Of a DNA stretch of 64,000 nt, positions 1-37,732 are shown in pieces (the stretch's first letter is position 1; each line of letters opens with the position of its first letter). This DNA comes from Malacoraja senta. Lineage: Eukaryota. The stretch spans positions 124,001 through 188,000 of the forward strand of contig CM075980.1 in assembly GCA_038087875.1 (NCBI GenBank). Direction: 5' to 3'. The translations under genes were made by a program, and so were the position numbers. The notes beneath the pieces are model-generated. The model had not been told where the DNA came from. It saw nothing but the letters and a program-made list of their open reading frames with translations, and made no database searches.

Positions 1-533
1 TCCACAACAAAATGTACAGGTTGCAAGGAAATTTCTATAGGCATTTTATGATAATAGCTATTAAAAACCGACTATACCCATCTGACAGGTTAAACATTAC
101 ACTAACTGACAAGAGATGGCCAAAGGACATAACTGCAGCAAATGTTCTTTTGGTAATATATTTAAAGGTGTCAAGACACCACATTACCGGACATTCAGAT
201 TAGATGTACGTGTTGTGAACAGCAATGAAGATACCCAGTTTGTAAGCACCAGATTTAAAAAAAATATATTGATAAACGCTGTTTCCATCATTCCCACTTC
301 AGAATTAACGTTAAAATTTCAACTGAAATATCTCCTGACCAAATTTGTGATGTATATGATCGACTAGAAATAAAACCTGGATAAATCCAACGTATTGTTG
401 TGAATGTTGCTCATTAAATAACTACAGTACTGATACTCCATATTAAGAACATTGATTTGCCGTTAAAATGAATTCTGTAATAACGTGTCAACGGCAGCAG
501 TGACAATCGAACACTCCGGTTTTAATGTTTCAC

Positions 534-1000
534 ATAGAAACATAGAAAAATAGGTGCAGGAGTAGGCCATTCGGCCCTTCGAGCCTGCACCGCCATTCAA
601 TATGATCATGGCTGATCATCCAACTCAGTATCCTGTACCTGCTTTCTCTCCATACCCCCTGATCCCTTTAGCCACAAGGGCCACATCTAACTCCCTCTTA
701 AATATAGCCAATGAACTGGCCTCAACTACATTCTGTGGCAGAGAATTCCAGAGATTCACCACTCTCTGTGTAAAAAATGTTTTTCTCATCTCAGTCCTAA
801 AAGATTTCCCCTTTATCCTTAAACTGTGACCCCTTGTTCTGGACTTCCCCAACATCGGGAACAATCTTCCTGCATCTAGCCTGTCCAACCCCTTAAGGAT
901 TTTGTAAGTTTCTATAAGATCCCCCCCTCAATCTTCTAAATTCTAGCGAGTACAAGCCAAGTCTATCCAGTCTTTCTTCATATGAAAGTCCTGACATCCC
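534..1000 (-). mobile_element. CR1 LINE 3' fragment inserted in transposon copy 1
   Basis: RTRGHSLRIKG...[15 protein letters not shown]-terminal CR1 ORF2 motif; ATAGAAAC tail repeat. Confidence 0.9.
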
Positions 1001-1641
1001 ATGTTCACAATTTAATTAATCCATCTTTGGAGCAAAGGAAATAGGCAACGTTTTGGGTCGAGACCCTTCTTCAGACTGTTCCCCCCATTCTTCTTGAATG
1101 GGAGGATCAGTACAGGATGGGGGGGTTGGGAGATCAGCGCAGGATGAATGGGGGGGGTGCAGGGTAAATGGAGGGTGGTGGGTCAGTACGGGATGAATGC
1201 GTGGATTAGTACAGGATGGATGGAGGAGAAGTGCAGGATGGATGGGAAGGGGGGTAAGTACAGGATGAATTGGGGGACCAGTGTAGGATGGATGGGGGGG
1301 GTGGCAGGAGAATCAATGCGAGGTGGATAGGGTGATCAGCGCAGGATGAATAGATGGGGGGGGGGTAGATGGGAAGGGGAGCACAGGGGATGTCGGTGAG
1401 GACTGAATAGAGGCAGGAATGGGGTTCAGTGCGGGATGGAGAGGAGGGGTCCCAGGATAAGGGGGGGTGGAGGGGGCGTACAAGAGAGAGAGAGAGAGAG
1501 AGGGGGGGGCGAGGTGGGGAGGAAGGAAGGTCAGCGCTCCTCGGACAACATCGCCCTGCTGCCTTGGCCGTTGGGATCTCCTCGCCATCGCCTCCCTCCT
1601 CCGCCAGCCAACAGCAAGGTGCGGGGCCGAGCGGTGCAGCT

Positions 1642-1669
1642 CAAAGATCCTATAGCTATAGGATCTTTG
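1642..1669. mobile_element. 28-bp perfect palindrome with 8-bp flanking direct repeat (TIR-only micro-element); degenerate copy at 16142-16169
   Basis: GTGCAGCT-CAAAGATCCTATAGCTATAGGATCTTTG-GTGCAGCT. Confidence 0.7.
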
Positions 1670-1758
1670 GTGCAGCTGCTTCAGAAGGGTCGGAGCGAAT
1701 GACGGGCCCCGCACAGTGGCTGCGACAGCGGCTCCATCTCCTCCTCCTCCCTGATAGC

Positions 1759-1891
1759 GGCCGCTGCTTGCAAATCCGCTAACGGCGCTTTCAAAACAAA
1801 CCCTCCCGCACGCCGAGGCCCCTTCTCCCGGCCTCGGCGTGCGTGGGGGTTTGTTTTGAAAGCGCCGTTAGCGGATTTGCAAGCAGCGGCC
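1759..1891. repeat. Long inverted repeat (62-bp arms, 9-nt loop) inside the transposon; homolog at 16261-16409
   Basis: Arms 1759-1820 and 1830-1891 are reverse complements with 2 mismatches. An outer IR (GGTCGGAGCGAATGACGGGC) extends the structure to about 1689-1932. Confidence 0.92.
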
Positions 1892-2173
1892 CTTATCAGG
1901 GCAGGGGCGGGAGCCCGTCATTCGCTCCGACCTTTCGTCACTCCGCACCTAGTATCTTTGCCCCGCGCTACAGCCGTCGCCGACACGAAACGTCGCGTTC
2001 CTTTTCTCCAGAGATGCTGCCTGACCCGCGGAGTTACTCCAGTTTTTTGTGTCTATCTTCGGTACAAACCAGTATCTGCGTGCCAAGCCGGGCAAAATGA
2101 CTCGGCCTTTAGGTTGCCCGGCGGCACTTTGGGTGGTCAATGGCACCCGGGCAACTGCTAATTTAGAGTCCTG

Positions 2174-2290
2174 TGTAATAGCGGCGCATTTGGATCGCAG
2201 TAACAGGATCGGTCCAAGTCAGGATGGATTTATGAAGGGGAAATCGTGGTTGACAAATCTTCTGGAATTTTTTGAGGATGTAACAAGTCC
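2174..2290 (+). mobile_element. CR1 RT fragment
   Basis: [36 protein letters not shown]. Confidence 0.8.
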
Positions 2291-2501
2291 CTTCCAGATC
2301 TTTAGAGTTAAGCAGTTATTCAAAACTACAGGCCATCACAAGATAGTCTGACCAATTTCTTGGGCTCATGTGATTTTTTTTTGTCAGTAAAAATGTATGT
2401 ACTGTATCTGGATTTTCACGGTTACTAAAACAGATAATAGTTTAATACTTAACACCAGTAAACCTGTCTAACTTTCACAAATGTATTAATTTTGTTAAAA
2501 G

Positions 2502-5500
2502 TAAAAGTTGGATTGCGCCATCCTGATCCAGTTGTGGAGACCAGTTCCTTATCAAGTGTGACACCTCCTGATGTTTGGTATCGGTTGACTCTACAGGAGG
2601 AGACCATTGACAGTGGCTGGCTATCTGCTTTGCAGCTGGAAGCAATTACCTATGCTGCTCAGGTACTGAGCTTTTAAAACAATTGGTCTACATGCAAATA
2701 AGTTGAGCAGCAATGCCCTCAGATCCAAGTGTTAAAGAAGGAACTGCAGATGCTGGAAAATCAAAGGTACACAAAAATGCTGGAGAAACTCAGCGGGTGC
2801 AGCAGCATCTATGGACCGAAGGAAATAGGCAACGTTTCGGCCCGAAACGTTGCCTATTTTCTTTGCTCCATAGATGCTGCTGCACCCACTGAGTTTCTCC
2901 AGCATTTTTGTGTACCCTCAGATCCAAGTGTGGCCATTACTAAGTCCTGTTCAACATTTATTGTTTTGAACCACAGCAACATGAAACATTCCTCCCCAAT
3001 GGAGACCGTGCAGCCTTCCTGATAGGGGACGGGGCTGGTGTGGGTAAAGGCAGAACCATTGCTGGCATCATTTTTGAAAATTACCTTCTTGGTAGAAAAA
3101 GATCAATATGGTAAGTGGAAACAACATGAATCCAAATTATCCAAAGCGTGTTTACTGCAGTTGACTAAAGTTGAGGTTCTGTGCTTATTACAGGTTTAGT
3201 GTATCCAATGACTTGAAGTATGATGCTGAAAGGGATCTGAGAGACATTGGAGCAAAAAATATTCAAGTTCACGCGCTGAATAAGGTAATGAACAGTTCTT
3301 TTTGAAGGTGGTATCATTTATGTTAAAGGGGGAACTAGTCCACTTTTCTTTCATAACTGAATCAATTTTCCTACTATATATTTGAGGCCAATTTAGATTT
3401 GTATGCTTTTCAACAAGATAATAGTGCTTTCCACTTTCCATAGCCTCGCTGCTTCCAGCCTTTCCCATTACGGATTGACATTTCTGTATTTTAGTTTAAG
3501 GCTTCTGAATTGCTCATTGGAGAGTTTCAGTGGGTATACGGGGGTATTTTGCTTCATGGGTGATCAGGAACTGGGAAATGCAAGTGAAGGCTTTGTCTTT
3601 GTGGCCATGAAGTATTACAATGTGGCACATTATTTTAAATCTGACAATTAGTTTTCAATAAGTTTAATGATTTTCTAAAATCTCACTATCTAAATATAAA
3701 TGCATATAGTTATTTGTGGAAGCTTGATAGGATTGAATGCTCCCTGCACGGGTAAAACCCATGGTGACAAGTATATGTACCCAAGATGTGGAGGAAGATG
3801 ACCTTTGCATAAAGAGAAAAAAGAAACATGAGCATAGGGAACTAATGACTATTGACAATAAATAAACTTCCTGGTATTTTTAGTTTATTTAAGTAAGTCT
3901 TTTCCCATTTCCATTCCCACATTACTGGAGTCCTTTTCAGATTTGTTAACTTAAAGATAATTCAAAGTCTTGGTAAGATCGGAAAGTCCTGAATTGCATG
4001 GTTTGGGCTGCAGATTGATATGATGTGATGTATTCTGGAATATCTACAATTTACTGCACATAACATCGTGTGCATAATTTTGGCCCATACCTTCTTCACA
4101 CTTTGGGTCTTGGCAACCAATGTTGGAAATATGTACACTAATAATGTCACCATAACTACACTTGTTTGTTTTCCAGTTAAAGTATGGAAAAATCTCTTCC
4201 AAACAAAATGGAAGTGTGAAGAAAGGTATCATTTTTGCAACATATTCTTCACTAATTGGTGAAAGTCAATCAGGTGGAAAATATAAAACCAGGTTAAAGC
4301 AGCTTTTGCACTGGTGCGGAGAAGACTTTGATGGGGCTGTATCCTTTTTGTTAGTACAGAATTTAAGTATCACTGTGGTATGTTCCACGAGTAATAGAAC
4401 CAAAAGTACTGTTTTCTACAGAGATGTATTAAATGAACTATGTCCACGATGATTTGTTTCACATATCCTTTGTTTTACAATGTAGTATGACTATTTTTGT
4501 CTGGTAGAAGAGAGAATGCTTAGCTTTGTTGTATATTTAGATACTTTGATGTAGTATTGCTGTCCATTGCCAGTAGACGGGACTGCCGTCATCTGGGTCT
4601 ATGTCTACCTGACCAATGTCATTTGGGCTTGTCTTCCCATGGCACTAAGGAAATGCTGGTTGTCTGTTGGAGTGGAATTTGGATCTTGGAACTACGCATA
4701 TTTCTAAATCCATGGCATCCATTTATAGCTTGCCTTGCTTCCTGCATAACCTTCACCTGTGGGCACTTCAGTCGTTCAGCATCTTTCATGGCACATTTAA
4801 TGGGAATTGGAACTTGGCTTTTTGAGAATAAAACCATTGTAATTAACTGGATGGTTGCATGCTATTTACAGTTAATATAGTTAAAAATAACCTTAACTAA
4901 ATTATTGCAGATAGTTTTTGATGAATGCCACAAAGCCAAAAATCTGTCACCTGTTGGTTCTTCAAAACCCACAAAAACGGGACTGGCAGTATTGGAACTG
5001 CAGAACAAATTGCCAAAGGCACGCGTCGTGTATGCCAGTGCAACAGGTATGCAAACGTGGGAGCTTTAGTTTTGTCTTTGTGATCACTAACGTAAATGTA
5101 TTTACTTTGGGGGAAGCTGGATGGAGGAGCATAATTGTAAAGCAGGACCATGGCCATTCACATGCAAAATATGCAGGTGCAAGGAACATGAAATAGTAAA
5201 AACAGAAATGCTGGAAATGTGAAGCAGATCAGGCAGCATCGGTGAAGAGAGAATCAAATGTTTCAGAAATACCCTATCATCAGAATTCTTACCACCTTTG
5301 TACCTTCCTTTCCCATTTAAATTCATGACATCTCTGATGCTCAACCACTTTGACAGTTTCTGCTTTTTTGTTCCTAAATGTACCAGCATCTGGAGTTCCT
5401 TGTGTCTCATCTTTCCCATGGCCATCTAATTCATGTGCACTTGCCTCTCTTGTTCTCATTCATTTGGCAGAACTCATTCTAGTGCTGAACAACCTCCCCT

Positions 5501-8500
5501 TCTCCTCCACTTACTCCTTCCTTGGCAAAGTAGTATCTATGGGATCTCATGGACCCAAGCTAGGCTTGGGTATGTGGAATTATATTAGTTTTAGTCCTAC
5601 TTGTCCCCCAAGGTTCCTCCAATCCCTCAATTCTTTCTCTGCAACATTGATGTCTGTATTGATTCTGCCTTCTACACTGGCATTGAATTTAAATAGTTTG
5701 TTACTTTTGCTGCCAGTAGTCACCCTGCTCTCACTTTCATGTGGTCTACATTTGAAATTTCATTTCCTATCTTGTGTGTCTGTCTCCAACTTGGTGGGGG
5801 GGGGGGGGGGATAACATCAGTGATCTATTAAGTCCATGAATTCTCATAAATATCTCTCCATATTGCTTCTTGCAATTCCTTTATTATCTCTGTTTCTACT
5901 GTATTTACGCTGTTGACAGGACTTTCCACGTCAATGTTTCTGAAATTTCTTCCTTATTCTTTACCTGCTGCTCTATTGCAGTTGACATCTCTATTTCCTG
6001 TACTTCCACTTTTGTCCCCTCACCTCCACGCAAGGATAAATTCCCTTTGTTCTTGCCTTCCACGACCACCAGTCTCCTCATTCAGCAATGTGGTCTTGTA
6101 CGTAGGAGAATCAAATGCGGATCGCGTGATTACTTTACAAAGTGAGGTGAAATGTCAGGATGTCAAATGCAAGAGAGTATCGTGAAGCAAATGATAAGAC
6201 CCTTGGGAGTATTGATGGACAGAGAGATCTTGTGAGCAAGTCCATAACTACCAGAATGTGGTAATATTTCGACGAGGTGTATAAACAAGGTCTACAGGCT
6301 GCCTTTATGGATCAGGGTGTAGAGTATAAAAGTTGGCAAGCCATGTTGTGGCTGTATAGAACTCTGGTCAGGCCACATTTGGTACAGTTCTGATTGCGTG
6401 TTACAGGAAGGGTCTGTGGGCTTTGGAGAAGGTGCTCACCCAAATGTTGCTTTGATTAGAGAGTATAAGTTCTAAGGAGAAGTTGGACAAAGTTGGAAAC
6501 GCATATGATAATGGCATTTAGACTCCTAAACAGGCAAGTAAGGAGGAATATGCACCATGTGCAGACAGATTTTCAGTTTAAATTGGCGTCATGGTCAGCA
6601 CAGACATGGTGGGCCAGAGGGCCTGTACCTTGCTGTACTGTTCTCTGTGCACAAAGATGATTTGAAACCATGGAAGAGGGATTTTTGAGTATACTTAGGC
6701 CTTTTGAATATTATGAATCATGAAGTTCAGCATGGCCCCTACAACTCTTACCAACTCCTACAGATGAACCATAGAAAGCATTGTATCAGAATGCATCACA
6801 GCTTGGTTTGGGAACAGCTCCATCCAAGTCCGCAAGAAGTTACAGCGAATTTTGGACGCAGCCCAGACCATCACATAAATCAACCTCCCTTCTGTCGACT
6901 CCATTTATACCTCGTGCCGCCTCGACAAGGCCAGCAGTATAATCAAGGACGAGTCGCACTCTCTCTTCTCCCATCGGGCAAAGGGTATAGAAGTGTGAAA
7001 ACGCACACCTTTAGATTCGGGGACAGTTTCTTCCCAGCTGTTATCAGGCATCCTATCGCAACCAGAGAGCAGTGCTGAACTACTATCTACTTCTTTGGTG
7101 ACCCTTGGACTATCCTCAATCGGACTTTGCTGGCTATACCTTGCACTAAACGTTATTCCCTTATGTAAACGTTATTCCCATATACACTGTGAATGGCTCT
7201 ATTGTAATCATGTATTGTCTTTCTGCTGACTGGGTAGCGCACAACAAAAGCTTTTCGCTGTACCTTGGTGCACGTGACACTGAACTGAATGATGTTCTTC
7301 CTTTGTACTTATGGTATTATTCCCCATAATAGGTGCATCAGAACCTCGAAATATGGCTTATATGAATCGACTTGGAATCTGGGGTGAAGGCACACCATTC
7401 AAAGAGTTCAATGATTTCATTCAGGCTGTTGAGAGGAGGTAAAATACAATCCAAACATTTAAGTATTGAAATATAATGGTAACAATATGTCAGCTAGAAT
7501 GAGCTAATTCCTTGTAATGGTTATGTTTCAGCCCAATTCTGTAAATTGTGTTTCTTTTCTTTAAAAATCTTGTTTCTTTAAAACAGAGGTGTTGGGGCAA
7601 TGGAAATAGTTGCCATGGATATGAAACTAAGAGGAATGTATATAGCAAGACAACTGAGCTTTTCTGGAGTAACCTTCAAAATTGATGAAGTTCCCCTCAG
7701 TCAAGATTACATAAAGATGTATAATAGAGCAGTAAAGCTGGTAAGTCACGGTGCAAAGCTTTGTGTTTGGGGGGGCGGGGGGGGGGGGGGGGGGTTGCAG
7801 GCACCCCTTTGTTTGCATGGGGATCTGCAGCTGCTAGAATTGAAGATTAACACCATCATAAATCCTTTTCCATTGTGTTAAAATTCTGCTTTGAAGTAAC
7901 TGATATTTTTCCTTAAGTGTAGAAATATTAGGTAGTTTCATTGAAGCATAAATTACGGTCTAGTTTAGTTCACAAGTTCTAGGAGCAGAATTAGGCCATT
8001 CGACCCATCAAGTCTACTCTGCCATTCAATCATGACTAATCTATCTTACCTTCTCAACCCTATCCTGACACTCTTACTCATCAAGAATCTAAAATTTTAA
8101 ATAGTAGCAAGGAATAGTAAATGTTTAGAATTATAACTGTAGCGAGGAAATTTGAGAGCACAAATAAAGATATTAAGTTACCAGCTTCCTTTCAATGAAG
8201 CCTGAATCTGTCCTGAATTGTTTAAAAATATATATTTATTTTGTTGAATGCTGACTTTTTAATCTTTTCAGTGGGTAGAGGCAAGGGAGAAATTTCAAAT
8301 GTCAGCGGAGCTGATTGATGCAGAGCAGCGGATGAAGAAGTCCATGTGGGGGCAGTTCTGGTCCGCACATCAGCGTTTTTTTAAGTATCTCTGCATTGCT
8401 TCCAAAGTTAGGAGAATAGTGCAACTTGCCCGGGAAGAGATCAAGAATGGAAAGGTGATGAATCATAAATAAAGGCTGTCAATGTTTTTTCTTGTGATTG

Positions 8501-11500
8501 TACCTGCCTCAACTATCTCCTCTGGCAATTCATTTCATATACTTCCCACTCTTTGTGTAAAAATAAAAAGTTGCCCCTCGGGCTCCTGTTAAATCTTTCC
8601 CCTTGCACCTTAAACCCATGTTCTCTGATTCTCGATGCCCCTACTCTGGGTAAAAGACTGCATTTACCCAATCTATTTTTCTCATGATCTTGTACACCTC
8701 TATAAGGTTGCCTCTCGTCCTCCTGCGCTCCAGTGAATAAAGTCTTAGCCTGCTCAACCCCTCCCTATAAATCAGGCCCTGAGTCCTGACAACATCCTTG
8801 TCAATCTTTACTGCACCCTTTCCAGCTTAGCAACATCTTGCCTATGGCAGGTTAACCAAATCTGAACACAACACTCTAAATGTGACGTCATCAATGTCTT
8901 GTACGACTGTAACATGACCTTTCATCCATCTATTTCCAATATTGAGAAATCAGCAAATGCACTCTTTTAAAATTGCAGCAGGGAAGTTGTACAAGTTGTT
9001 GCTGATAAATAAAATGTAAACCATTCTAATACCTTAATTTTGTAATGACTTCTAGTGTGTGGTTATTGGTCTTCAGTCCACTGGAGAAGCACGGACCCTG
9101 GAAGCTCTGGAAGAAGGAGGTGGTGAACTGAATGATTTTGTTTCAACTGCTAAGTATGTTTGCATAGTATAAATGTTTCTTACTGTCAGTGTTATTTGAA
9201 AGGTGGTAGTAATACAAAACGAGCTGAGCATTTGTTTGTGGCATGTGGGAGTTGCTGTCAGGCTGAGTAGTTCTCCCAACTGGAATTTCATTTGTTTTGT
9301 ACGGAAGTCTTGTACCAGCGAGGAAAAATGAGGGAAAAGCTATAACCGGCCCTGTACCTTTCAACATTGCGGCATTGCACAGATGTGATCACACTCTGTA
9401 AATGCACGTTCTTTACATGCGCTACGAAAGCTCTGGAGTATCAAATGGTTTGTAAACAAAAATTCAGTTACTTGAGCTGTCTTAATTAAAGGACGGTAGA
9501 GTTATGGTCAAATAAATTTCCATTAATTTTTTTATTGTATCTGCTTGATTTGAGCAATCTGACCAATCTACATGAATACGTGTGATCAGGCAGTTTAAAA
9601 ATGCAAATAATTGCATTGTGAGCAATTATTTCATGTAACGATTCATGAATAGCAGCTGCGTTTTCCCCAGGTTTTCCTAATGTCATGCATCTGATTAATG
9701 GTATCAACTCTGGAGGGTATGGACAGACCATATTTCCAGTTGGGATCTATCTCCAGGCTAATGGAGTAAGGGGGAGAAAGCTGAACGGTTGACTGGAGTA
9801 GAGAGGGGGATCTGTTTCTCCACCCCCCCCCCTTCAGTCTGAAGAAGGGTCCCGACCTAAAATGTTGTCTGTCCATTCCCTTTGTGAGTGCTGCCTGACT
9901 CCGTTGAGTTCATATTGCACCTTGTTTTGCTGCCTATTGTCTTCTTTTTCAGGAATGATTTAAGATAATTGTATCTGCTGGGGTGACTGGAGTATTCATA
10001 ATGCTTTTTATTGATTTCTATTTTTAAATTGTTGCAGAGGTGTTCTTCAGTCTTTGGTTGAGAAACATTTCCCAGCACCTGACAGAAAGAAGCTGTACAG
10101 TTTGTTGGGGATAGAAATGAATGTGCCCAGTAATCAAGACTCTCCCATTGACAGTCCATCAAGACAAAACAAAGGGAAAAAACGGAAAGGTATGACCTTC
10201 CCTTTTACAGATATTGGTGAATGTATTGCTTCTGGGAGTACAGTGTTTGAGTTATCTCAGTTAAAATGCTGAGCTATGTTGATCCATGTAAATCAATACA
10301 TTTGTGTATATTAAGGGCATCAAGGTATATGGGGAGAGTGCTGGATATGGTGCCAGGATAGAATATTTACCATTATGTGCATGAAGGGCAGACGGGCATG
10401 AAGGGCCACATGGCCGACTCATTTCTTACATTTTTACACTTATTTTTGCCTCCCTTCACCCACCATTGGTTGAACCCTCAGCAGCCAGGACCATTTCTAT
10501 TATTGAAATGACTTTGATAGCCTGTCACTTAGATCAATCTTTTGGTAAGCTATTTGGCTGGACAGCAATTTGTTTTCTGATATATTTATTGAAGGGGATG
10601 ATGATTGGTAGCTATTGACATAAATCCACGTATTTGAAAATTGCAAAGTTTCATTCTTTCTCTTTTGTGAGCCATTTAAAATCTAACTCTTATTTTCTCA
10701 GCTAATGAGGACAAACGGGAAGCTAAAAAAGCCCGCAAGTCCAAAGGGCTGGCTGGGAGCAGCTCATCGGGGAGTGAATCTGAAGGGTCTGAAAGTGAAG
10801 GCAGTGACGCAGAAAGTTTTCACTCTGTTAGTTCTGCTGACGATGACTTCAACCCTTTCAGAGATGAATCTTCCGATGAAGAGGATGGTAAGTTGGAGAA
10901 AACTAAGTAATTATGAAACTGATGAATCAAGAGGTGCAGCATGAGGGTGGGCACGTTATAACTGTGCAATTACCTCTTACCCTTCTGTTATATATGACAT
11001 ATAATTCATGAGTCTTTTGAGTAATTGCTCTTTGAGCAATCCCGTTCTGCCCTTCCCTCTTATCTTTTTGTTCACGCATGCCCCGACCCTATAATCCGAT
11101 TCCCCAACCAGCCGCCTACACGAGGGATAATTCATTAAGGAACCAGCCAACACCTCTTTGAAATGTGGACGGAAATGCAAATTCCACACAGACGGAATAA
11201 ACTTAATTGAAAGTATGATGAGGTTATAAAACTCTCCGTTATATGGGACGTGTCCAGACTTATCAAGAAAAAAATTAGATGAACTTAGTTTAGTTTATTG
11301 TCCCGTGTACTGAGGCACAGGGAAAAGCTTTTGTTTGCATGCTATCATTTAAAGAACAGACAATACATTTAAAGAACAGGCTATACATGAATACTATCAA
11401 GCCATCCACAGTGCACCAATACAGGGTAGGGCATTTAGTGCAAGATATCTTATAGCAAAATATATATCCATATCAGTAATGCTGAGCTGTACTTTGTCCT

Positions 11501-14500
11501 GCTCACTGTTCAGTACGCTACACTTCCCATTGTTGCATGTGAAAAAGTTTCATCAGTCAACACAGATGATGTCTTCTCCTTACAAATCATTCCATGACTT
11601 CACTCCTACTGTCTGCCATGTGACTATGTCTTGAGAGTATTAACCTAAGAGTCATGTGGAGGTTGGAGAATTCTGAGGGGTACGAGTTCAATGGGGCAGG
11701 GAGATTGTGAAGCAGGGTCTTCAGGAGGCTTTAGCAGGTGAATTCATTCAGGATTCTGTTTGTAATGAAGATGAAAGGAATGGGAGAATAGATAGTGATG
11801 AGTTGCACCAAGGGTGTGTCAGACATGGCAGCCGTTGGGCATATTAACTGAGATCTTGTAAGAGATAGAGAGGATTGTGATAGATCTGTGTTGCTCTCCC
11901 AGGGCTGGAGGTTGAGGATGACTTTAGAGGAGCAGAAATCAAAGGGATTTGATATGGCCATTTGATGGCACGGTGTAGATATACTGTGGATTGTGTGGTG
12001 AAGCTGATAATTGAGATTAATGTTAATTGATGGTGACCTCAGCTAATTGTTTTGATTATCTGTTTTTAAGAAATCCTTTGGTTCTCCCAATATCTTTAAT
12101 TTTTTGTGACCATTCTCATTTTTGTTTTTAATAGATCCTTGGTTAGTAAGGAAAGACCGGAAGAAAGACAAAGAAAAGAAAAAGAAAAAGAAAAGCATTG
12201 ATCCAGATTCTATCCAAAGTGCCTTGCTAGCATCTGGCCTTGGATCTAAAAAGCCCAGCTTCTCCACCACGTCAATAAGCAGCACAACCAACAATGCACT
12301 TCCTTCAGGTATAAGTGTTGCCAATGTGGGAAAAGGTTAATAAACCTGTGCAGAATTACCAATTAGTACAGTGCAATGTTTGTTATTATGTGGGTGAAAC
12401 AGCTTTGTTTTAATCTTGCATTGTTAGGCACGCATAGGATTAGAGTCCATTTTCGAGAAAAATAAATTTCTCTTTCCTCCAAATAAAACTCTAGGTAACA
12501 GTAGCCATAGTATTGTAGCCAGCCAAGACGCAGTAGAAAGAGCCCAGCAAATGAAACGAGAGTTACTCGAGAAACTGGACAGGCTCGCTGAAGATCTACC
12601 TCCCAACACACTGGACGAACTCATAGACGAGCTTGGTGGCCCGGACAACGTGGCAGAGGTCAGTGTGAAGAGAACCATGTGGTCACGTGCATGTACCTGT
12701 AACTGACCAGCATCTATAAGGTGGACATCCCATGAGATGTTCCCCAGGAGCCCTGATATTGAGCCACAAGGAAACAGCCATGCAAAATAGGATTATTAAT
12801 CTATGTTGGGATTACAGTGAAGATGGGTCCTATGGTGATAGGAGGTAAACACAATGTAGCAAGCTCAAATAGAGGCAGCAGAGAAATTGAGTTGATGTGT
12901 GTGAAATGGGAGTTTGGCGAGAAAGGCACAGATCTTTGTAAATGTAGAGTAAACAAAAGCACATGTAAGATTTCAGCCACACATCATATTTGGTGCAAGC
13001 ATTGAGGTCGGACATTTGCTTGTCATTCTCAGACCATGGCTTGTGTAAATTGGCAGTGATGTTGAAAGTGAGGAGGAGAGTGTGGCTACAGAATAATATT
13101 GAGTTGGTAATAGAAGCAGAGAAGTGACAGGTGAAAAAAATTGAGGTATTGCATTCTGAAAGGTCAAATAAGTCTGTATACAATAAATGGTAAAAGCTTA
13201 AGTAGTACTGAGGATGAGAGGAAGCTGGGTGAGTACGGCCTTTCACCCCTGCGCAGGAAGAGAAGTTGGTTAAGAATGCTTTCCTTCATTAAAGGGGCAT
13301 AGAACAAGTAAACCAAAAAAGACAGCTTTTTAAATTATTTTTTTAATATTTTATTTATTAGAAGTAATGTACATTACAGTGATATAAGCCAAAAATAACA
13401 TAATACATTTCCTGTACCAGTTGTTTTAAACTTTAAAAAGGAGAAGAATAGAGAGAGTTAGATAAGATAGTAAGTGCGTGAAAGAGTGATCAGGAGAAAC
13501 CCGTAGAAACGTAAAACACGTGAAAGAGTTAAAAAGAAAACCATAGGAAAAGAAAGAGAAAAATAGAAAACAGAAGATATAAGAAAGTAAAATAAGATAA
13601 AAGGGATGTACCTACTTTGTATCTTTACACACCCCTCACCAGGTCCTGAAACCATTTATTTTCAAAGTTATGTTGCACCCTATGCTTGTAATAAGTCGAT
13701 AAATGGAGACCAAATCTTTTGGAAATGGTCTGATTTGCCTGCTAGGAGGAATCTCATGTCTTCGAGGTGTAACATTTCGGACACATTTGAAATCCACATT
13801 TTTATCGTTGGTGTGGGAGCGTTTTTCCAGAATTTAAGTATGTTTTTTTGCCATTATTGCCGTAATTAAGGAAGCTCTTTTGGAACGAAGTCAGCTCAAA
13901 GCTGGCTTCCATAGTTCCAAAAACAATCAATTCTGCGTTCGGTTTCAGTTTTATTTTAAATAATTTTGTAAAAATTTCATCGATTTAATTCCAAAAATTT
14001 TGGATTTTTATACAAAAAACAAAGGAATGTGCTATAGTTGCTTCTTGGGATAGACATTTATCACAGATGGGGGAGACATTTGGAAAAAAATTACTTATTT
14101 TAGTTTTTGAGTAATATAGTCTATGTAAGGTTTTGAATTGGATTAGAATATGTCTTACATTGATCGAGCATTTGTGCACATATAGCAAGTGTTTATCCCA
14201 ACTCTCTTTTGAGATTTTTATAGCTAGTTCTTGTTCCCAATCTCTTCTAATTCTATCGGATGATGGTATTTCTATATTTAGGATGATATTACAGGGCTCT
14301 CGCTTAACTTTTTTTCTCTGTTGCCAGACGGGCAACCTTGGCAGCTTTTTAGGTTGCCAAATGACAGTTTAGGTGGTCATTTAAGATGGCTTGCATGACG
14401 CGTGCGATAATGTGCTTGGAGCAATGAAGCATTCACATATTATTTCTGCTTCAAATAAAGTCACAAGCTAAACATATTCACCAATCAAGACATGATATAT

Positions 14501-17500
14501 CCCACAATGACATGCAGCAAAATTAATAGACAGTATCTCAACTCTTTTTACACATTGCAATTAATGCAATTTCTATTAGTTCTTTCCACTTCCAAACAAA
14601 AATGTGTCAATAAATCCTGGACCATGGTAAAATATATGCGTACGTATAGTTATGATTGTTGCTCATTAAATAACTACAGTACTGATACTCCATATTAAGA
14701 GCATTGATTTGCCATTAAAATGAATTCTGTAATAACATGTCAATGGTAGCAGTGACAATCGAACACTGCGGTTTTAATGTTTCACGTGTTCACAATTTAA
14801 TTCATCCATCTTTATGGATTAAAACAAATAATAACATTGGGAATTAAAACACATTTGATTGCATTCCGTTATCAAACATAGTCAATGTTCGCTCTGAAGA
14901 CATTTCCAGCACAATGGGGTCTGGGAGGGGGGTGTGTGTGAATCAGTGTGGGGTGGATAGATGGCGGGGGTGGGGGGGGTTAGAAGGCAGTCGGTGCAGA
15001 ATGGATGGATTGAGGCAGGTGAATTTGTACGTGTTGGTTGGAGTAGGTAAAATTGTGAGGAGAGCATGGGGGATGTCATAGAAACATAGAAAATAGATGC
15101 AGGAGTAGGCCATTCGGCCCTTCGAGCCTGCACCGCCATTCAATATGATCATGGCTGATCATCCAACTCAGTATCCTGTACCTGCCTTCTCTCCATACCC
15201 CCTGATCCCTTTAGCCACAAGGGCCACATCTAAATCCCTCTTAAATATAGCCAATGAACTGGCCTCAACTACCTTCTGTGGCAAAGAGTTCCAGAGATTC
15301 ACCACTCTCTGTGTGAAAAATGTTTTTCTCATCTCGTCAGTGGTGTTGAATGGGGGGGTTCAGTACGGGATGGATGGGGTAGACAAAAGTGCTGGAGAAG
15401 CTCAGCGGGTGAGGCAGCATCTATGGAGCGAAGGAAATCGGCAAGGTTTCGGGTCGAGACCCTTCTTCAGACTGTTCCCCCCATTCTTCTTGAATGGGAG
15501 GATCAGTACAGGATGGATGGGGGGGGAGATCAGCGCAGGATGAATTGGGGGGGGTCTGTGCAGGATGAATGGGGGATCACTACAGGATGAATGGGGGATC
15601 ACTACAGGATGAATGAGGGGAAGGGGGGAAGGTGCAGGGTAAATGGAGGGTTGGTCAGTATGGGATGAATGTGTGGATTAGTACAGGATGGATGGGGGAT
15701 TAGTACAGGATGGATTGGGGATCAGTACAGGATGGATGGAGGAGAAGTGCAGGATGGATGGGAAAGGGGTAAGTACAGGGTGAATTGGGGAACCAGTGTA
15801 GGATGGATGGGGGGGGGGGGTGGGTGGCAGGAGAATCAATGCGAGGTGGATAGGGTGATCAGCGCAGGATGAATAGATGGGGGGGGGAGTAGATGGGGAG
15901 GGGAGCACAGGGGAGGACTGAATAGAGGCGGGAATGGGGATCAGTGCGGGATGGAGTGGAGGGGTCCCGGGATAAGGGGGTGGAGGGGCGTACAAGAGAG
16001 AGGGCGAGGTGGGGAGTAAGGAAGGTCAGCGCTCCTCGGACAACATCGCCCCGCTGCCTTGGCCGTTGGGAACTCCTCGCCACTGCCTACCTCCTCCGCC
16101 AGCCAACAGCAAGGTGCGGGGCCGGGCCAGGCGATGCAGCTCAGAGATCGTATAGCTTTCGGATCTTTGGTGCAGCTGTTTCAGACTGGTCGGAGCGAAT
16201 GACGGGCCCCGCACAGCGGCTCCACCGCCTCCTCCTGCCCCTCGCCCGCCCTGATAAGGGCCGCTGCTTGCAAACCCGCTAACGGCGATAACCGCTTTCG
16301 AAACAAACCGCTCCTGCACGCCGAGGCCTCCCCGTCCCTCCCGGCCTCGGCGTGCGGGAGGGTTTGTTTCGAAAGCGGTTATCGCCGTTAGCGGAGTGGC
16401 AAGCAGCGGAAGGAGGAGGAGATGGAGCCGCTATCGCGGCCGCTGCTGCCGCTGTTCGGGGCCCGTCATTCGCTCCGACCCTTCCTCACACCGCATCTAG
16501 TATCTTTGCCCCGCACAGCCGCCGCCGACACGAAACGTCACGTTCCTATTCTCCAGAGATGCTGCCTGACCCGCGGAGTTACTCCAGTTTTTTGTGTCTA
16601 TCTTCGGTACAAACCAGTATCTGGTTGCCAAGCCGGGCAAAATGACTCGGTGTTTAGGTTGCCCGGTGGCGCTTTGAGTGGTCAGTGGCACCCGGACAAC
16701 CGCTAATTTCGAGCCCTGTATTATTCAAGTATGATATTAAATTAGTTGATTCTGCCTTTATATTCATTGCTTCGTCAAATAGGTCTGGAGACAAATTTTG
16801 ATATTCTTGTGTATTTTTTCAAATAATCACGGATTTGAAAATATTTAAAATATTGATTACTTCTCAGATTGTATTTAAGTTGTAGTTGGAATGATTTTAA
16901 AAAATCCAGTTTCATACATGTCTCCAAACGTTTTAATTCCTATTCTTTCCCAATGTGTAAATGATTTATCTATAATGGATGGTTTAAACGATGGATTATT
17001 AACTATGGGAGAGAGAAGCGATAGGTTTCTTAATTTTAGGGTTAATTTTATTTGTTTCCAAATTCTAATTGTACTATGCATAATTGGATTTTTACTGTAT
17101 ATTGTGAGTTTTATTGGTGAGAGAAGGATCGCTCCTATATTAAAAGGGGAGCAATCCTCTCTCTCCATTACTATCCAATCCACCCGTTGGGCAGAGTTGT
17201 CCAACAGGTGAATCACATTTTTGACATTTGCTGCCCAATAATAATACAAAAAATTAGGGAGTGTTAATCCACCAAATTCTTTAGGTTTGCACAAATGTCT
17301 TCTTTGAATTCTATGGGATTTATAGTCCCATATAAAATTTGTGATATCAGAATCCAGTTTAAAAGACAGCTATTAAACGTGTTTATTTTTAATTACTTCC
17401 TAGAGCTTTTTCTAATTTCAGAAAATAAGATTTTAAGTTGGTAAAATGTCATACTTGACAAAAGGCAATATTCTGCTTATGCTTATGAAATCATATTAAT

Positions 17501-20500
17501 GACTAAGTTGTTCATAGTATTCATCTTTAATTACTGTTGTTCCTTGTTTGATATATTGAAATGTTCCTGTAATTCAAATGTTGCTAAACTTCTTGAATTG
17601 AAATGTTGTTTTCTAGATGACAGGCCGGAAAGGTAGGGTTGTGAGCAACGATGATGGCAGTATATCTTACGAGTCTCGGTCCGAACTTGATGTTCCTGTG
17701 GAAATCCTCAACATCACGGAAAAGCATCGGTTTATGAATGGAGAGAAGGTATGAGGAGTTCTCGTCAGACATTTATTTTACAGGCGATGCTCTGATTATC
17801 ATTTTTGATTATTGTTTTTTGCACACCAGAATATTGCGATAATTTCGGAAGCAGCCAGTTCTGGGATTTCATTGCAAGCAGATCGCAGAGTAAAGAACCA
17901 ACGGCGACGGGTGCACATGACACTGGAGCTGCCTTGGAGTGCAGACCGTGCCATTCAACAGTTTGGTGAGAGCCCGCCACAGTTTTGTTCCCTCCTCTCT
18001 GTACATGAAGTTTAGTAACTTTATTTTAGACAATTGGTGGAAGACCGACTGTGCCAGTTAGATGTAATGTCTGAAGCTAGGGAATTGTTGGCCAAAATCA
18101 CCCAAATGTTCAAATTCCTCACCACTGATTGCCATCAGCAGGCATCTGCTCCACTGCTGAATATCTGCAGCTGTAATTAATGGATCTGAGACTTTTAAGA
18201 TCAACGGATTTTGGGTAAATCTTTTGCTTTTGCTGGAACTGGAAACTGATTATTGTTTGATTCACAGGTAGAACACATCGGTCAAACCAGGTGACTTCTC
18301 CCGAGTATGTTTTTCTAATATCTGAATTGGCAGGTGAACAGAGATTTGCTTCTATTGTTGCAAAGAGGCTTGAAAGTTTGGTAAGTTCATAACTTTTAAA
18401 ACAACATTTCCAACAAGGTTGCATTTCCAGTTTCACACCAAGTCCAACAAATTGGAGAAATTAAAAAAACTGCCCCAAAAGGTTGCCACCCAGGTTCATT
18501 TTTATTAGTTGTCTTTCTCCCTATTCCATCCTCATTACTTGCCAACTAGATCTGAAAGGTTGGGATCTTTCTGCAGTTGATATGTTTGCAGTCTATTTGC
18601 TTTCATGATCTGCTAAAGAAGTTCATGAAATGACTGAATTTACTTCATTGACCATGGTAAAATATATAAAATATATTCTGCAAAAGCATATCGAAGCATC
18701 AATATCAACTGAGCAGATGGGAAAGGAAAGAAGAAAGACATTTAACAGCCTCTTTCACAATCAGCCAGCACAATTTCCTCCAGAGAGGAGAAAGTTGCAT
18801 TCTTGAAAAGGTGATGGTTAACGGTTATGGGCATAAGACAGGAGAATTGGGTTAAGAGGGAAAGATAGATCTGCCATGATTGAATGTAGACTCGATTGGC
18901 CGAATGGCCTAATTTTGCTCCTATGACATATGACCTTATGAGCAGCTGCTTGGGCAGTATTGAAGGGACCTTTTTATGAACATGTTTCAGAAATCATCTT
19001 GGGGATTTAACAATGGCTGGAGCTAGATACTTTGATGTTATTCGTTGCATAGGAAGTTGGAATTCACAACAGACCCGTATGTAAGACTAGCTTCAGAAAG
19101 CATTGTAACCTCTGTACTTGGAGTGCACCATTGCCTCATGTTAATGATATGAAGCATATTATTTTTGTATACCTTACTTCCTGGTTCCAACCAGTATCTT
19201 CAACCAGAGAACAATTCCTCCAGATTATGTCTGATCTGATCAGTGTTTTCCAACACTTTCTCTTTCAATTTCAAATTCGCAGCACCTACAGTTTTTGAGG
19301 GTTTTTTTCTAGGATGTTTACTTTGTTTTACCTTTTGGACAGGGTGCCCTAACTCATGGTGATAGACGTGCCACTGAAACCAGAGACCTGAGCAGGTTTA
19401 ACTTTGATAACAAGGTAATGTTCTAATTATCTGGGTGTGGAATAATGGGGTTTTACAGTTGCTTATTTTACTTTTCACAATTTATTTAATATTTAGTCAC
19501 TTTTCTAAGTTATTGCATGTATTTTGCAATTGAAATGAGAAATGGCATGACCACAGTAATTTTAATTCATCAAAACAAAAACCAGGATGTGGCAATAAGA
19601 TTCAGGCTCATTGTGAATGAAGTCATATGTTGTATGCACATAATCTGATAGGCTGCCACAATTCTAATGTGGTGATGGACTGTTTGCTACTTCTACAGTA
19701 TGGACGGAATGCCTTGGAAATAGTCATGAAGTCCATTGTAAATCTAGACAGTCCGCTGGTGTCATCACCGAAAGACTACTTTGGGGAATTCTTCAAAGGT
19801 ACAGTACACACTCTTATTTAACTTGTATCCACTGTTATGAACTCTATGCTTGGTTTAATCTGCTTTCTAAAGTTCTTGTCACCCAAGTAAAATTGTTCTT
19901 TCACACCTATTCATTTTTACGGTTAATGCAGCCTTGGTTCATTTACAGCATTCTAATTCTGGATTAGTTAGTTATGGTTCCAACTTCACAGCAGAGAGTT
20001 TGAGCGCTCCATCTTAGTTGAGACTGCCTCAGAAGCATAAGTTCATATACAATCCTTGCAATATTGGATGAAGAATTCTCTGTGCCTGAATCTTCAGATA
20101 AATGTGTAAGGTTCCACAGCACATGTTAAAGAAAAGGAAGTTTTCCTGTGTCCCGTCATTTATCTCATTTCTGTTTACATAAATGAATTCAAATTGATTG
20201 TCAGATTTCCTTTCAGTAAAGCTGCACGTCAAACAGAACAAACTTAACTACATGGAATGGTGCTTAAAGGTTTTTTGTGAAGTCTGCACACAATTCACGT
20301 GATCACTCAGCTCGCAAAAGGGAGCTGTATTAACTTTGCACATTTCATATAGATACGTCAACAGCTCTTCCAGTGAGCTGTTTGTTATCTGACCATGATA
20401 TAAACACCAAGCTGTTGATTTGTTTCATATGGTACACCGTGATGAGTTTAAACACCTCATGTCCTGTAACACGACTCCACTTGTGGTGGCACATCCATTT

Positions 20501-23500
20501 TTAAGAATGGCCCCTTCCTGCGTCAAGGCTGAAACACCTTGAGTGTGAGCAGCTGTAGACACTTTGTGTGCTGATGGTCCCCAAGGATGCAGGATCTGTT
20601 ATGAATTCCCCAGATGATACAGCAATGTTGCCCACAGGACGGTTCAACTACCTAGACATTCAATGCTTTTATTATTAACCTCATTGAGCGAGCCATGCTT
20701 TTCTTTTTGCCTTTGCTTTTTAGAATATAGAACAATACAGCACAATAGCAGGCCCTTCGGCCCACATGTTTGTGCTGAACATGACGCCAAGATCAACTAA
20801 TCTCATCTGCCAGCACATGATCCATGTCCCTCCATTCGCTGCACATCTATGTGCCTATGTGGAAGGTCTCAGATGCTGATGAGTCAGAGTCATGCCCCTT
20901 TTTCTGGTGCTAACTCGCACATTTCCTGCTTGATTATTTTTGCCACTTGAGTTCTGGGCGTGTTAAGCCAAGGCAGTATCCACAGTAGTGTAGAGCATAA
21001 CTAACATTACTGCTTTTAGAATATAAGTCCTCATGTTTTAACCCAACAAGTATCACCATGGATATTAACAGTAATGAAAGTGGAAAGTTGCAAGATCTGA
21101 AGAATTGCATCTCCATCTATTGGTCCTTTAATCAGCTCTAAACGTGCTCTAATAATTGCTTCCCCTTTATCTTTTGTTTGCTTTTTTTTCCAATTTGTTT
21201 TGGTTTTAATTTCTTTATTAAGCTAATTGCAGGTAACCTCTTCTGTGCCTTTGTATCTCTAGATGTTCGACAGGGATTAATTGGTGTTGGTTTAATAAAT
21301 ATGGAAGACCGTTCAGGACTGCTTACACTGGATAAAGGTAACATTTTCACGAAAGTCTGATCTTAAGGCGTGTTTCTGCAATCCAGGCCCCTTGGCTGAC
21401 GATGTGGTTAATGCATTGCAGATTACAACAATATCGGCAAATTCCTCAACCGGATCCTGGGCATGGAGGTGCACCAACAGAACGCACTCTTCCAGTATTT
21501 TTCAGATACTTTAACCGCTGTCATTCACAATGCTAAAAAGAATGGAAGATATGATATGGGAATTTTAGGTAAGTCCTTTATTTTATATTGTAATTTATTT
21601 TTATAAATTTATTCATCGATTTACCAATTTTTGCTTTTCATTTTGGACAGATCTGGGTTCTGGGGATGAGAAGGTGAAGAAACTAGAAGCTAAAAAATTC
21701 CTTACTCCTGGATATTCGGTGTCAGGACGTGTTGAACTGTATACTGTAAGTGGCTATACCCTTTTGGTGAGGTGGTTTGTATTTTGGATCTTTGGTTTTC
21801 CTTTTAACCAGGCCTTTTCCTGAGGTTCAGCACAAAGGCTCTTCAAAGTTGTGTGAGAACACCATTAAGGCAGAGTTCTGTCCTTGTCTAAGGTGTATGA
21901 GCTGCTGTAGGGAATGGCTGCTCAGCTATCGGGAGGTGAGATCTTGGGTAAGCTTTGGATGTTGAGACCATTTGTAACTCACTCCTGCTGCTTATGATTG
22001 AATGTAGACCCATCTCGCTGTCGCAAGAGAGCAACCAATATCATCAAAGACACCACCCACCCAGCACACAAACTGTTCACCCTCCTACCATCCGGCAAGC
22101 GCTACCGCAGCATGCGGAGCAAAACCACCAGATTCAAAAACAGCTTTTTCCCTCGGGCCATCAGGCTACTCAACACACTCAAGAAAATTCCATGAACATT
22201 ACACAAACAAAGACCAACTGACTGTCAAATTAACTTTAACTCAATGTCTGCAGTATGCTATTTGCACTTTTCTATATTGCACCTTTTATTATTGCACCTT
22301 AATAACATACCTCAAAATTTTACTACACTCTGGCACACTGTGAATATTTTATATAATGTATATGTCCATTGTCTATCTTTATTGGTATATTGTCTGTCTG
22401 TGTTATAAATATTACTTGCACATTGGAGTATGGGGAAACGCAATTTCAATCCTCTGTAACTACTTGTTGCATTATTTGAATTGACAATCAAGTTGACTTT
22501 TACTACTATACGGAATCATATTGAACAGTTGATCTAGCAGATGAACTCGGCTATTTACAGGTTGCTCCAAATGGGAACGTTTCCTATTCCCAGCCCATTA
22601 CGTTGTGCAGCTGAGGAGCACAGCTATCATAACTATGATTGAAGATGACATGAAACTCAAATACCCTAATAGAATTTGTAAGAGTTTGATTACCACAATT
22701 TTGGAGTTTTAACAAAGCATGTATCTTCGTAGGTAAGTGTTGAAAGAGGAATGTCCTGGGAAGAAGCTACAAAGATTTGGGCAGAGCAAATGGGAACGGA
22801 TGACGGCTTCTATCTGTCAATGCAGGTATGTGAAGGGAAAGGGGTGAAGTAAAGACTGTGGCTGGTGTTGTGGATCACATCCTGCTGCACGTTACAATAA
22901 CACTTGTCCTTGAGCTGGAACTGAATTGGTATTAAAAGATATCCTTCCAATATCATCAAATGTCTTTTTTTTGTACATTGGCAGTGAAATGGGAGAGTAC
23001 TGTACAGAACTAATTAATTAATTAATAGCAAATGTAATTATGTCCTTTTGTTCTAGATAAGAAATAATAAAAAGACAGCAATCCTTGTGAAGGAAGTTAA
23101 CATCAAGAAGAGACTGTTTATGATGTACAGACCAAACACTGGCAAACAGCTCAAGCTGGAGAATTATATTGACGTAAAAAAGAAGTATAAAAAGGTGAAG
23201 GGAAATTTGCTAAACAAACCTAGTGGTATGTGGACATGCCGGTTACTGACATAATGTTGCTTTGTTTCCTCAAGCAGCGCAGTGGCACGTCGCTGCCCCA
23301 CAGCTCCAGGTGCAACGATCCACACACCACCGTCACTGGGTGCTCTCGCGGGTTTTCCATGTTTCTCCCTCCCTCTCTCTGGCTGGCATGGGCGTGGTGG
23401 GCCGAATGGTCTATTTTCATGCTGTGACTTTGACACATCGCAAAGATGTGCGGCTAGGGTAAATTAGCTACTGTAAATTAGTATGGTATGGGACTTTATT

Positions 23501-30150: not shown

Positions 30151-30289
30151 AGCGGTGTTGATGTCAACTGGCTGCTTTGTCGTTTCCTCCCTGCAATCCT
30201 CTCCTTAATCCTTAAAAAATTGGGTTAATTGATGTGCAGAGGTTGAGCTGAATTCAAACAATAATAAAGACTAAATGTTATCGGTAAGG

Positions 30290-30555
30290 AGCATCTGGTA
30301 GCTGAGTCTCCTGCTTTGGTGCCAGAGACCCAGGTTTGATCCTGACCTTGGCTGCTCTCGGTGTGGAGTTTGCATGTTCTCAATGTGACCATGTGGGTTT
30401 TCTCCCACATCCCAAAGAAATGTGGGTTTGTAGGTTAATTGGCCTTTGTAAATTGCCCCGAGTGCAGGGAGTGGATGCAAAAGTGGGATCATGTAGAACC
30501 AGTGAGATTGTGGACCTGGTGGGTTGATGGGCATGTTTCCAAGCTGTATCTCTAA
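30290..30555 (+). mobile_element. tRNA-derived V-SINE/HE1-like SINE (duplicate about 48322-48587)
   Basis: B-box-like GGTTTGATCC and the TGTGGAGTTTGCATGTTCTC...TCCCACATCCCAAAGA central domain. Confidence 0.75.
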
Positions 30556-32520: not shown

Positions 32521-32542
32521 ACTCAGGCCCTCGATTCCTGGA

Positions 32543-37648: not shown

Positions 37649-37732
37649 CGGGTGTGAAGCTTAGTCTTAGGCAGTATTCTGAAAAACACAAGTTAGTATT
37701 ATTTAACGTTTGTTATTTATATTAATTTATAT

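What the first reader, a model, noticed from the sequence alone, without database searches (positions are those of the whole stretch)
1689..16480. Internal hairpin of the DNA transposon: both arms change together between copies
Seen: copy 1 arms read AACGGCG-CTTTCAAAAC / GTTTTGAAAG-CGCCGTT (1759-1891). Copy 2 arms read AACGGCGATAACCGCTTTCGAAAC / GTTTCGAAAGCGGTTATCGCCGTT (16261-16409). A 7-nt indel and an A/G substitution in one arm are each mirrored exactly in the other arm, although the surrounding element sequence has diverged between the copies. The spacers between inner and outer IR look like different deletions of one longer ancestral arm. Inference: arm identity is maintained either by arm-to-arm copying (cruciform processing, template switching, gene conversion) or by selection on a DNA or RNA structure. 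When SBNO1 is transcribed, the 16261 copy would form a >60-bp dsRNA stem, a possible ADAR or small-RNA substrate.
Basis: partly seen in the sequence, partly recalled or inferred. Interest (0 to 1): 0.72.

Follow-up and report, generated by a model that had tools for sequence, protein, structure and literature searches.

The report
Decaying hairpin inside a skate repeat
Two intronic copies of a very abundant skate repeat each carry a 250-300 bp DNA hairpin whose arms share one small mirrored change, most simply a single old arm-to-arm copying slip inherited by a sub-family, while everything else in the arms decays independently, so this is an ordinary case of a known mutation process.

Summary
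Copy 1 (palindrome 1684-1937) lacks 7 nt in both arms and has A/T. Copy 2 (16184-16485) has CGATAAC/CGGTTAT and G/C at the mirror positions. That is the only concordant change, one patch of about 15 nt.

Aligning the four arms shows 8 further substitutions, two per arm. It also shows a 1-nt bulge and four different spacer deletions. None of these is mirrored. Arms within a copy are no more alike than arms of different copies. A neighbouring 28-nt palindrome, perfect in copy 1, is broken in copy 2.

The hairpins sit at the same place in two about 93% identical copies of a larger high-copy repeat, so they did not insert independently. Public contigs from three coded organisms show copy 1's state as the family majority. 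Copy 2's state, with several flank variants, is shared by about 18-25% of depth in one organism only. The patch is therefore a sub-family marker that arose once.

Best reading: one short-range template switch or arm conversion in a master element, then neutral decay. Selection on structure is not supported. Both copies lie in introns of a Strawberry-notch gene, on the sense strand. A long dsRNA stem is predicted but untested. The genome-wide test could not be run.

The parts
390..2174 (+). Copy 1 of the larger composite repeat. It lacks the 350-nt left terminus present in copy 2, and its right end coincides with copy 2's right end.
   Evidence: Self-BLAST; alignment, (about 7% substitutions in the flanks).
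1684..1937 (.). Copy 1 palindrome. The outer inverted repeat is 1688-1707 / 1913-1932, the inner arms about 1740-1820 / 1830-1910, and the loop 1821-1829.
   Evidence: (I1: 81-nt arms, 90% complementary). RNA fold -221.5 kcal/mol, z -22.5.
1781..1798 (+). Copy 1 left-arm patch: the 7 nt are absent between 1785 and 1786, and 1793 is A.
1853..1870 (+). Copy 1 right-arm patch: 1857 is T, and the 7 nt are absent after 1862.
14292..16719 (+). Copy 2 of the larger composite repeat. It has the 8-bp terminal inverted match CAGGGCTC / GAGCCCTG and TATTA on both sides. Homology to copy 1 starts at 14642.
16184..16485 (.). Copy 2 palindrome. The outer inverted repeat is 16188-16207 / 16461-16480, the inner arms 16261-16328 / 16343-16409, and the loop 16329-16342.
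   Evidence: (I5, I11). RNA fold -245.4 kcal/mol, z -18.7.
16286..16300 (+). Copy 2 left-arm patch: extra CGATAAC (16286-16292) and G at 16300, which creates a CpG.
   Evidence: The family majority at 16300 is A.
16370..16382 (+). Copy 2 right-arm patch: C at 16370 and extra CGGTTAT (16376-16382), the exact reverse complement of the left patch.
   Evidence: The family majority at 16370 is T.
1642..1669 (.). A perfect 28-nt palindrome just upstream of the hairpin in copy 1. Its copy 2 counterpart (16142-16169) carries 4 changes, none mirrored. It serves as an internal control.
   Evidence: The family majority equals the copy 1 state at 16150, 16158 and 16160.
2944..3111 (+). Open frame holding a Strawberry-notch exon (AAA_34, [10 protein letters not shown] motif). 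It is the first exon downstream of copy 1.
   Evidence: PF13872, E 5.6e-20.
17617..17751 (+). Open frame holding a Strawberry-notch exon (Helicase_C_4). It is the first exon downstream of copy 2. The previous exon lies at about 12428-12703.
   Evidence: PF13871, E 2.3e-11.

Best explanation
The hairpin is an internal, once near-perfect palindrome with arms of about 150 nt. It belongs to a larger, very abundant interspersed repeat of skate genomes. In the lineage of one master element, a small complex change in one arm (7 nt plus a transition 7 nt away) was copied onto the other arm. A single short tract of 15-34 nt did this, either by intramolecular template switching during replication or gap repair (quasipalindrome 'correction') or by arm-to-arm gene conversion. 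That master founded a sub-family to which one of the two window copies belongs. After insertion both copies have decayed neutrally, with each arm collecting its own substitutions and deletions.

Shown: the anatomy, the single concordant patch, the arm-specific decay, the homology of the flanks, the high copy number and the sub-family distribution. Inferred: the copying mechanism, and its direction (copy 2's state is probably the derived one).
For: (1) Four-arm alignment. Only the indel and the adjacent transition group the arms by copy. Nothing groups them by side. Singletons are evenly spread at 2 per arm over about 70 nt, or about 2.9% per arm. Flank divergence is about 7% between copies, or about 3.5% per lineage. 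So the arms of each copy were last identical at roughly the time the copies separated and have drifted since.

(2) The tract is bounded by unconverted mismatches at 16275/16395 and 16310. That gives 15-34 nt, the size range of short-range template switches.

(3) The flanks on both sides of the hairpin are homologous between the copies, so the palindrome was inherited and not inserted twice.

(4) Contigs of 3 coded organisms were laid on copy 2. There were 65-69 thousand contigs per large run, and dozens to about 100 per hairpin position. The majority at 16300 is A (75%, 100%, 99%) and at 16370 is T (82%, 99.5%, 99.7%), which is copy 1's state. Copy 2's private changes (16150, 16179, 16315) have about 0% support. 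Its states at 15957, 16258, 16275, 16300, 16370, 16651 and 16671 are shared by 18-93% of depth in organism A, and mostly by 0-15% in B and D. The patch is therefore a sub-family marker.

(5) The mechanism is established elsewhere. Template switching homogenises inverted-repeat arms and yields multi-base compensatory changes (PMC8794818, PMC8604942, PMC7202029).
Against: There are only two full copies with both arms readable, so there is effectively one informative event. The contigs were too short and the arms too alike to link left and right states copy by copy. The 7-nt indel itself was not among the indel rows shown; only a collapse of depth across both 7-nt sites hints that most copies lack it. 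Polarity is not proven, because the CpG-bearing, 7-nt-bearing state could be ancestral. No donor for the 7 nt was found in the window, so the origin of the first-arm change is unknown.
Confidence: 0.6

Rival explanations
1. The palindrome is rebuilt from one arm at every round of transposition or gap repair, for example by snap-back or fold-back synthesis. Every change fixed in a master would then be mirrored automatically, and only post-insertion changes would be arm-specific.
For: Decay is star-like and even at 2 singletons per arm. Arm-to-arm divergence within a copy (3-6% in the inner arms) is no older than the split between the copies. The one sub-family-level difference seen inside the well-aligned inner arms is mirrored.
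Against: At least two variants that are common in the family are not mirrored within a copy. C at 16275 holds 67% of depth in organism A, but its partner 16395 is unchanged. The GC/AG variant at 1757-1758 versus the copy 1 right arm is the second case. The two copies share the same centre and edges, so the palindrome is inherited and not re-made at variable points. There is no direct evidence for such a replication mode.
Confidence: 0.12
2. The mirrored changes arose as two parallel, independent mutations in each arm. Both arms carry the same mutation-prone local sequence: a CpG for the transition, and a CG...CG microhomology with a small GCG-ATAAC-CGC hairpin for the 7-nt deletion.
For: A mirrored substitution alone occurs by chance in 6-12% of simulations. 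If CG/CG was ancestral, half of double CpG decays look mirrored. The 7 nt are flanked by a 2-nt direct repeat.
Against: An indel that is exact in position, length and sequence in both arms has a chance of well under 1 in 1000 from position and length alone (my estimate). The family majority at the site is a clean CA/TG, not the mixture of TG and CA expected from decay of CpG.
Confidence: 0.1
3. Purifying or compensatory selection keeps the stem paired because the DNA cruciform or the intronic RNA hairpin has a function, such as a transposase or host-factor site, or a small-RNA or ADAR substrate.
For: Predicted stems are very stable. The palindrome is conserved as a family feature in several organisms. 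Both copies lie in the sense orientation in introns of an expressed-type gene.
Against: Eight uncompensated substitutions, one bulge and four different spacer deletions are present in two copies. Arm substitution density equals the flank density of about 7%. Intra-copy identity is not above inter-copy identity. There is no Rfam family and no RNA holder. Stability is automatic for any young inverted duplication.
Confidence: 0.07

Closest known systems
Quasipalindrome-associated / short-range template-switch mutations (Ripley model; Loytynoja and co-workers; PMC8794818, PMC7954356, PMC8604942, PMC7202029)
   Same: There is an imperfect inverted repeat. A clustered multi-nucleotide change (indel plus substitution) makes one arm the exact reverse complement of the other. 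The tract is tens of nucleotides long and is bounded by mismatches that stayed unconverted.
   Different: The intermediate state, with the patch in one arm only, is not observed here. The event is inferred in a transposable-element master and then multiplied by transposition. It is not seen as a single-locus change on a species tree.
Foldback and long-TIR DNA transposons (Drosophila FB, Galileo, Tetris: PMC4079207, PMC2775673) and hairpin-forming MITEs
   Same: These are repeats that are largely one long hairpin. Arm structure is unstable, with internal deletions and arm exchange.
   Different: This hairpin is internal to a larger repeat. Its flanks are equally repeated and homologous between the copies, so it is not the transposing unit. 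No TSD is recognisable at its edges, and no transposase was linked to it.
Intronic inverted-repeat dsRNA substrates of ADAR or Dicer (inverted Alu pairs, MITE-derived miRNA/siRNA hairpins; from general knowledge)
   Same: A sense-strand intronic inverted repeat is predicted to form a stem of more than 60 bp.
   Different: No RNA, editing or small-RNA evidence could be obtained, and the stems are accumulating mismatches.

Membership tests
Template-switch / quasipalindrome correction event | A pre-existing imperfect inverted repeat spans the mutated site. | tested here: met
   Palindromes at 1684-1937 and 16184-16485.
Template-switch / quasipalindrome correction event | A clustered multi-base change makes one arm the exact reverse complement of the other, within a short tract bounded by unconverted mismatches. 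| tested here: met
   The 7-nt indel and a transition 7 nt away are mirrored. The tract is 15-34 nt, between 16275 and 16310.
Template-switch / quasipalindrome correction event | Ancestral or outgroup sequences show the change in one arm first, or the pre-event state. | tested here: inconclusive
   The family majority gives copy 1's state at 16300/16370. No copy with a one-arm intermediate could be read, and the 7-nt state of other copies was not shown.
Independent MITE / foldback element | Target-site duplication at the hairpin edges, with flanks unrelated between copies. | tested here: not met
   The flanks are homologous at about 93% on both sides. No convincing TSD is present; TCA lies near both edges but is offset by 1 nt.
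Independent MITE / foldback element | Copy number distinct from the surrounding sequence. | tested here: inconclusive
   Contig depth is continuous across the hairpin edges and is if anything lower inside. Contig depth is a poor measure of copy number.
Structured RNA or DNA element under selection | Compensatory changes exceed uncompensated ones, and arm identity within a copy exceeds that between copies. | tested here: not met
   There is 1 mirrored patch against 8 singletons, 1 bulge and at least 4 arm-specific deletions. Identity matrix. Only two copies were available.
Structured RNA or DNA element under selection | Match to a curated RNA family. | tested here: not met
   Rfam 15 at gathering thresholds found 0 matches in the whole window.
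ADAR / small-RNA substrate | A long, nearly perfect dsRNA stem within a transcribed region. | tested here: met
   Predicted only. Stems; sense-strand intronic position in a Strawberry-notch gene.
ADAR / small-RNA substrate | A-to-I (A>G) sites in RNA but not in DNA of the same animal, or small RNAs mapping to the arms. | not testable with these tools
   No listed run holding the stretch is on record as RNA. X15 is 'probably DNA'.

The most novel reading that the evidence does not exclude
Active master copies of this skate repeat keep their internal hairpin perfect by recurrent arm-to-arm copying or by selection, because the hairpin is needed for mobilisation or is processed from host introns into small RNAs. 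Sub-family-diagnostic changes would then systematically come in mirrored pairs, and only dead copies would decay.
Probability: 0.1. Interest if true: 0.55.

Novelty: new member of a known kind. Interest (0 to 1): 0.2.

Why it matters
If the simple reading holds, this is a tidy natural example of a known process. A template switch or arm conversion can produce an apparent compensatory change, indel included, without any selection. Once such a change sits in a transposable-element master, it is multiplied into hundreds of copies. That is a useful caution for covariation-based claims of functional RNA or DNA structure in repeats. It would matter more only if a genome-wide survey showed that mirrored changes are the rule in this family.

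Tried and rejected
(1) I tried to collect further copies.
- Exact-pattern scans with the invariant 20-nt outer repeat found nothing in metagenome contigs or viral contigs.
- In prokaryotic genomes the scan gave two single hits. About one is expected by chance for 20 nt in roughly 1.2e12 positions.
- A word search with the 78-aa open frame across the hairpin, meant to fish out ORF calls from other copies, found none.
- The scan's own notes had no look-alike by sequence.

(2) Rfam gave no match.

(3) I looked for a nearby donor for the 7-nt insert, as a template-switch source. No word of 10 nt or more occurs elsewhere in the window.

(4) I considered a flip/flop inversion of the palindrome between the copies, because c1_L is most like c2_R. 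I rejected it. The loops are C-rich on the same strand in both copies, and the diagonal likeness comes from independent deletions with different end points plus alignment slippage in GCGGC/CCTCC low-complexity sequence.

(5) I considered segmental duplication as the origin of the two blocks. It is unlikely. The right ends coincide exactly with a terminal inverted match, the sequence beyond is unrelated, and the whole unit is high-copy.

(6) A parvovirus-ITR-like or Helitron-end hairpin was only a passing thought. Nothing in the sequence or context supported it, and I did not test it further.
Full report
**What is there.** I read the quoted arms at the stated places. Copy 1 is a palindrome spanning 1684-1937, with its loop at 1821-1829. 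Copy 2 spans 16184-16485, with its loop at 16329-16342. Each has an invariant 20-nt outer inverted repeat, at 1688-1707 / 1913-1932 and 16188-16207 / 16461-16480. That 20-mer gives 4 matches in the window where 0 are expected. Each also has long inner arms. Arm pair I1 has 81-nt arms at 90% complementarity, and I5 has 49-nt arms at 94%. As RNA they fold at -221.5 and -245.4 kcal/mol, with z-scores of -22.5 and -18.7 against shuffles. Rfam has no match anywhere in the window.

**Context.** The hairpins are not free-standing elements. They lie at the same position in two paralogous blocks, 390-2174 and 14642-16719. The roughly 280 nt before each hairpin and 240 nt after it differ by about 7% in substitutions.

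Copy 2 extends left to 14292. There, an 8-bp terminal inverted match (CAGGGCTC / GAGCCCTG) and TATTA on both sides are visible. An earlier first-stage note (s1-141220) read this as a composite non-autonomous transposon. I checked only the termini. Copy 1 ends on the right exactly where copy 2 does, and it lacks the left 350 nt.

Open frames on the + strand match the two Strawberry-notch domains, AAA_34 and Helicase_C_4. They lie at 2944-3111, 4881-5066, 7582-7878, 17617-17751, 17809-18012 and 18261-18389. I searched the exons one by one by reference. I built no joined model and searched none. Both hairpins are therefore intronic and on the sense strand. I did not separate SBNO1 from SBNO2.

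**The four-arm test.** I aligned the two left arms with the reverse complements of the two right arms (alignment A2) and tabulated the site patterns.
- In the well-aligned inner arms, the only characters that group the arms by copy are the 7-nt indel and the transition 7 nt from it.
- No character groups the arms by side.
- Eight substitutions are private to one arm, two in each arm. Copy 2's left arm also has a private 1-nt insertion at 16310.
- Each of the four outer spacers carries a different deletion of what looks like one longer arm.
- Over the whole palindrome, arm identity within a copy is 90.4% (copy 1) and 83.1% (copy 2). Between copies it ranges from 85.1% to 93.5%. The most similar pair is copy 1 left with copy 2 right.

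A perfect 28-nt palindrome lies 15 nt upstream in copy 1 (1642-1669). In copy 2 it carries four changes, none mirrored.

**How unlikely is the mirrored patch?** I simulated four arms of 70 nt that mutate independently. A substitution shared by both arms of one copy appears in 5.7% of runs with 2 changes per arm, and in 12% with 3. The site is also a CpG/CpA site, which raises the odds further. The substitution alone is therefore weak evidence. An indel identical in position, length and sequence in both arms is the only strong item. Because the two changes lie 7 nt apart, one copying tract of 15-34 nt explains both. The tract is bounded by the unconverted differences at 16275/16395 and at 16310.

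**Family evidence.** One search for public runs found only partial holders in eight coded organisms, and none is on record as RNA. I laid the Logan contigs of four runs, from organisms A, B and D, on 15900-17100 at 80% likeness.
- The whole stretch is high-copy. Each large run laid 65-69 thousand contigs.
- Each hairpin position was covered by dozens to about 100 contigs.
- An extremely abundant short repeat occupies 16515-16637.

At 16300 the majority base is A (75%, 100% and 99% of depth in X1, X3 and X6). At 16370 it is T (82%, 99.5% and 99.7%). Copy 1 therefore has the common state.

Copy 2's clearly private changes (16150, 16179, 16315) have about 0% support in X1. Its bases at 15957, 16258, 16275, 16300, 16370, 16651 and 16671 are shared by 18-93% of depth in organism A. 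In B and D most of them reach only 0-15%. Copy 2 thus belongs to a sub-family enriched in one organism, and the mirrored patch is one of its markers. It arose once in a master element and was multiplied. It did not arise at this locus.

Several limits apply.
- The contigs are short.
- Either arm of any copy can be laid on either arm of the reference.
- The 7-nt indel was not among the indel rows shown. Depth does collapse across both 7-nt sites, for example in X1 from 166,273 at 16275 to 1,940 at 16300, and from 134,416 at 16370 to 17,186 at 16386. This fits most copies lacking the 7 nt, but it is indirect.

**Mechanism.** The best-supported account has three steps.
1. The ancestor carried a near-perfect palindrome.
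2. In one master lineage, one arm acquired a small complex change. That change was copied to the other arm by an intramolecular template switch during replication or repair synthesis, or by arm-to-arm conversion.
3. After insertion, each arm decayed on its own.

The even count of two private substitutions per arm is about 2.9% per arm. Flank divergence is about 3.5% per lineage. This fits arms that were identical at about the time the copies separated and have been neutral since.

Template switching is documented to homogenise inverted-repeat arms. It is also documented to yield multi-base compensatory changes without selection (PMC8794818, PMC8604942, PMC7202029). The anatomy and the distribution are shown here. 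The mechanism and its direction are inferred.

**Rivals.**
- *Rebuilding at each transposition.* The even decay fits this. It fits poorly with family-level variants that are not mirrored within a copy, namely 16275 against 16395 and the GC/AG variant at 1757-1758.
- *Parallel independent mutation.* This could explain the transition but hardly the indel.
- *Selection on a structure.* Uncompensated changes outnumber compensated ones, and the arms decay at the flank rate, so this is contradicted.

**The dsRNA idea.** A stem of more than 60 bp in the sense-strand intron is a fair prediction. No RNA data could be brought to bear.

**Verdict.** The phenomenon is a member of a known kind, and its interest is low.

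Noticed in passing
window 22382-40214 and 40415-58248: Two 17.8-kb stretches are 99.55% identical, in tandem, and separated only by the 200-N run at 40215-40414. This looks like an assembly duplication around a gap (haplotype or mis-join) and not like biology. It would duplicate any Strawberry-notch exons inside it.
   Followed up: partly
window 2766-2916: A nearly perfect head-to-head dimer (75-nt arms, 95% complementary, 1 nt between them) of the very abundant short repeat that also flanks both hairpins (1981-2079, 16526-16623).
   Followed up: no
window 1177-1400 and 15474-15900: A G-rich minisatellite with units like GGATGGATGGGG and CAGTACAGGATGAATG lies inside the composite repeat, upstream of the hairpin. 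Its unit number differs between the two copies.
   Followed up: no
window 59130-60000: A GC-rich tandem array is open in several frames on both strands, giving proline/glycine/arginine-rich translations such as HRPGAVLPP. Self-matches at offsets of about 100-450 nt reach 79-89% identity.
   Followed up: no
window 56089-58126 (and its twin near 38050-40090): Long open frames of 494 aa and 197 aa on the + strand look like a LINE-type ORF2. A related fragment reading [20 protein letters not shown] starts right after copy 1, at 2174-2348.
   Followed up: no
window 14292-14400 versus 16625-16719: The left and right terminal regions of the composite repeat share motifs in direct orientation as well as inverted (TTTAGGTTGCC, AAATGAC, GGTGGTCA). 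The inverted terminal match is only 8 bp. Its classification as a cut-and-paste transposon deserves its own check.
   Followed up: partly
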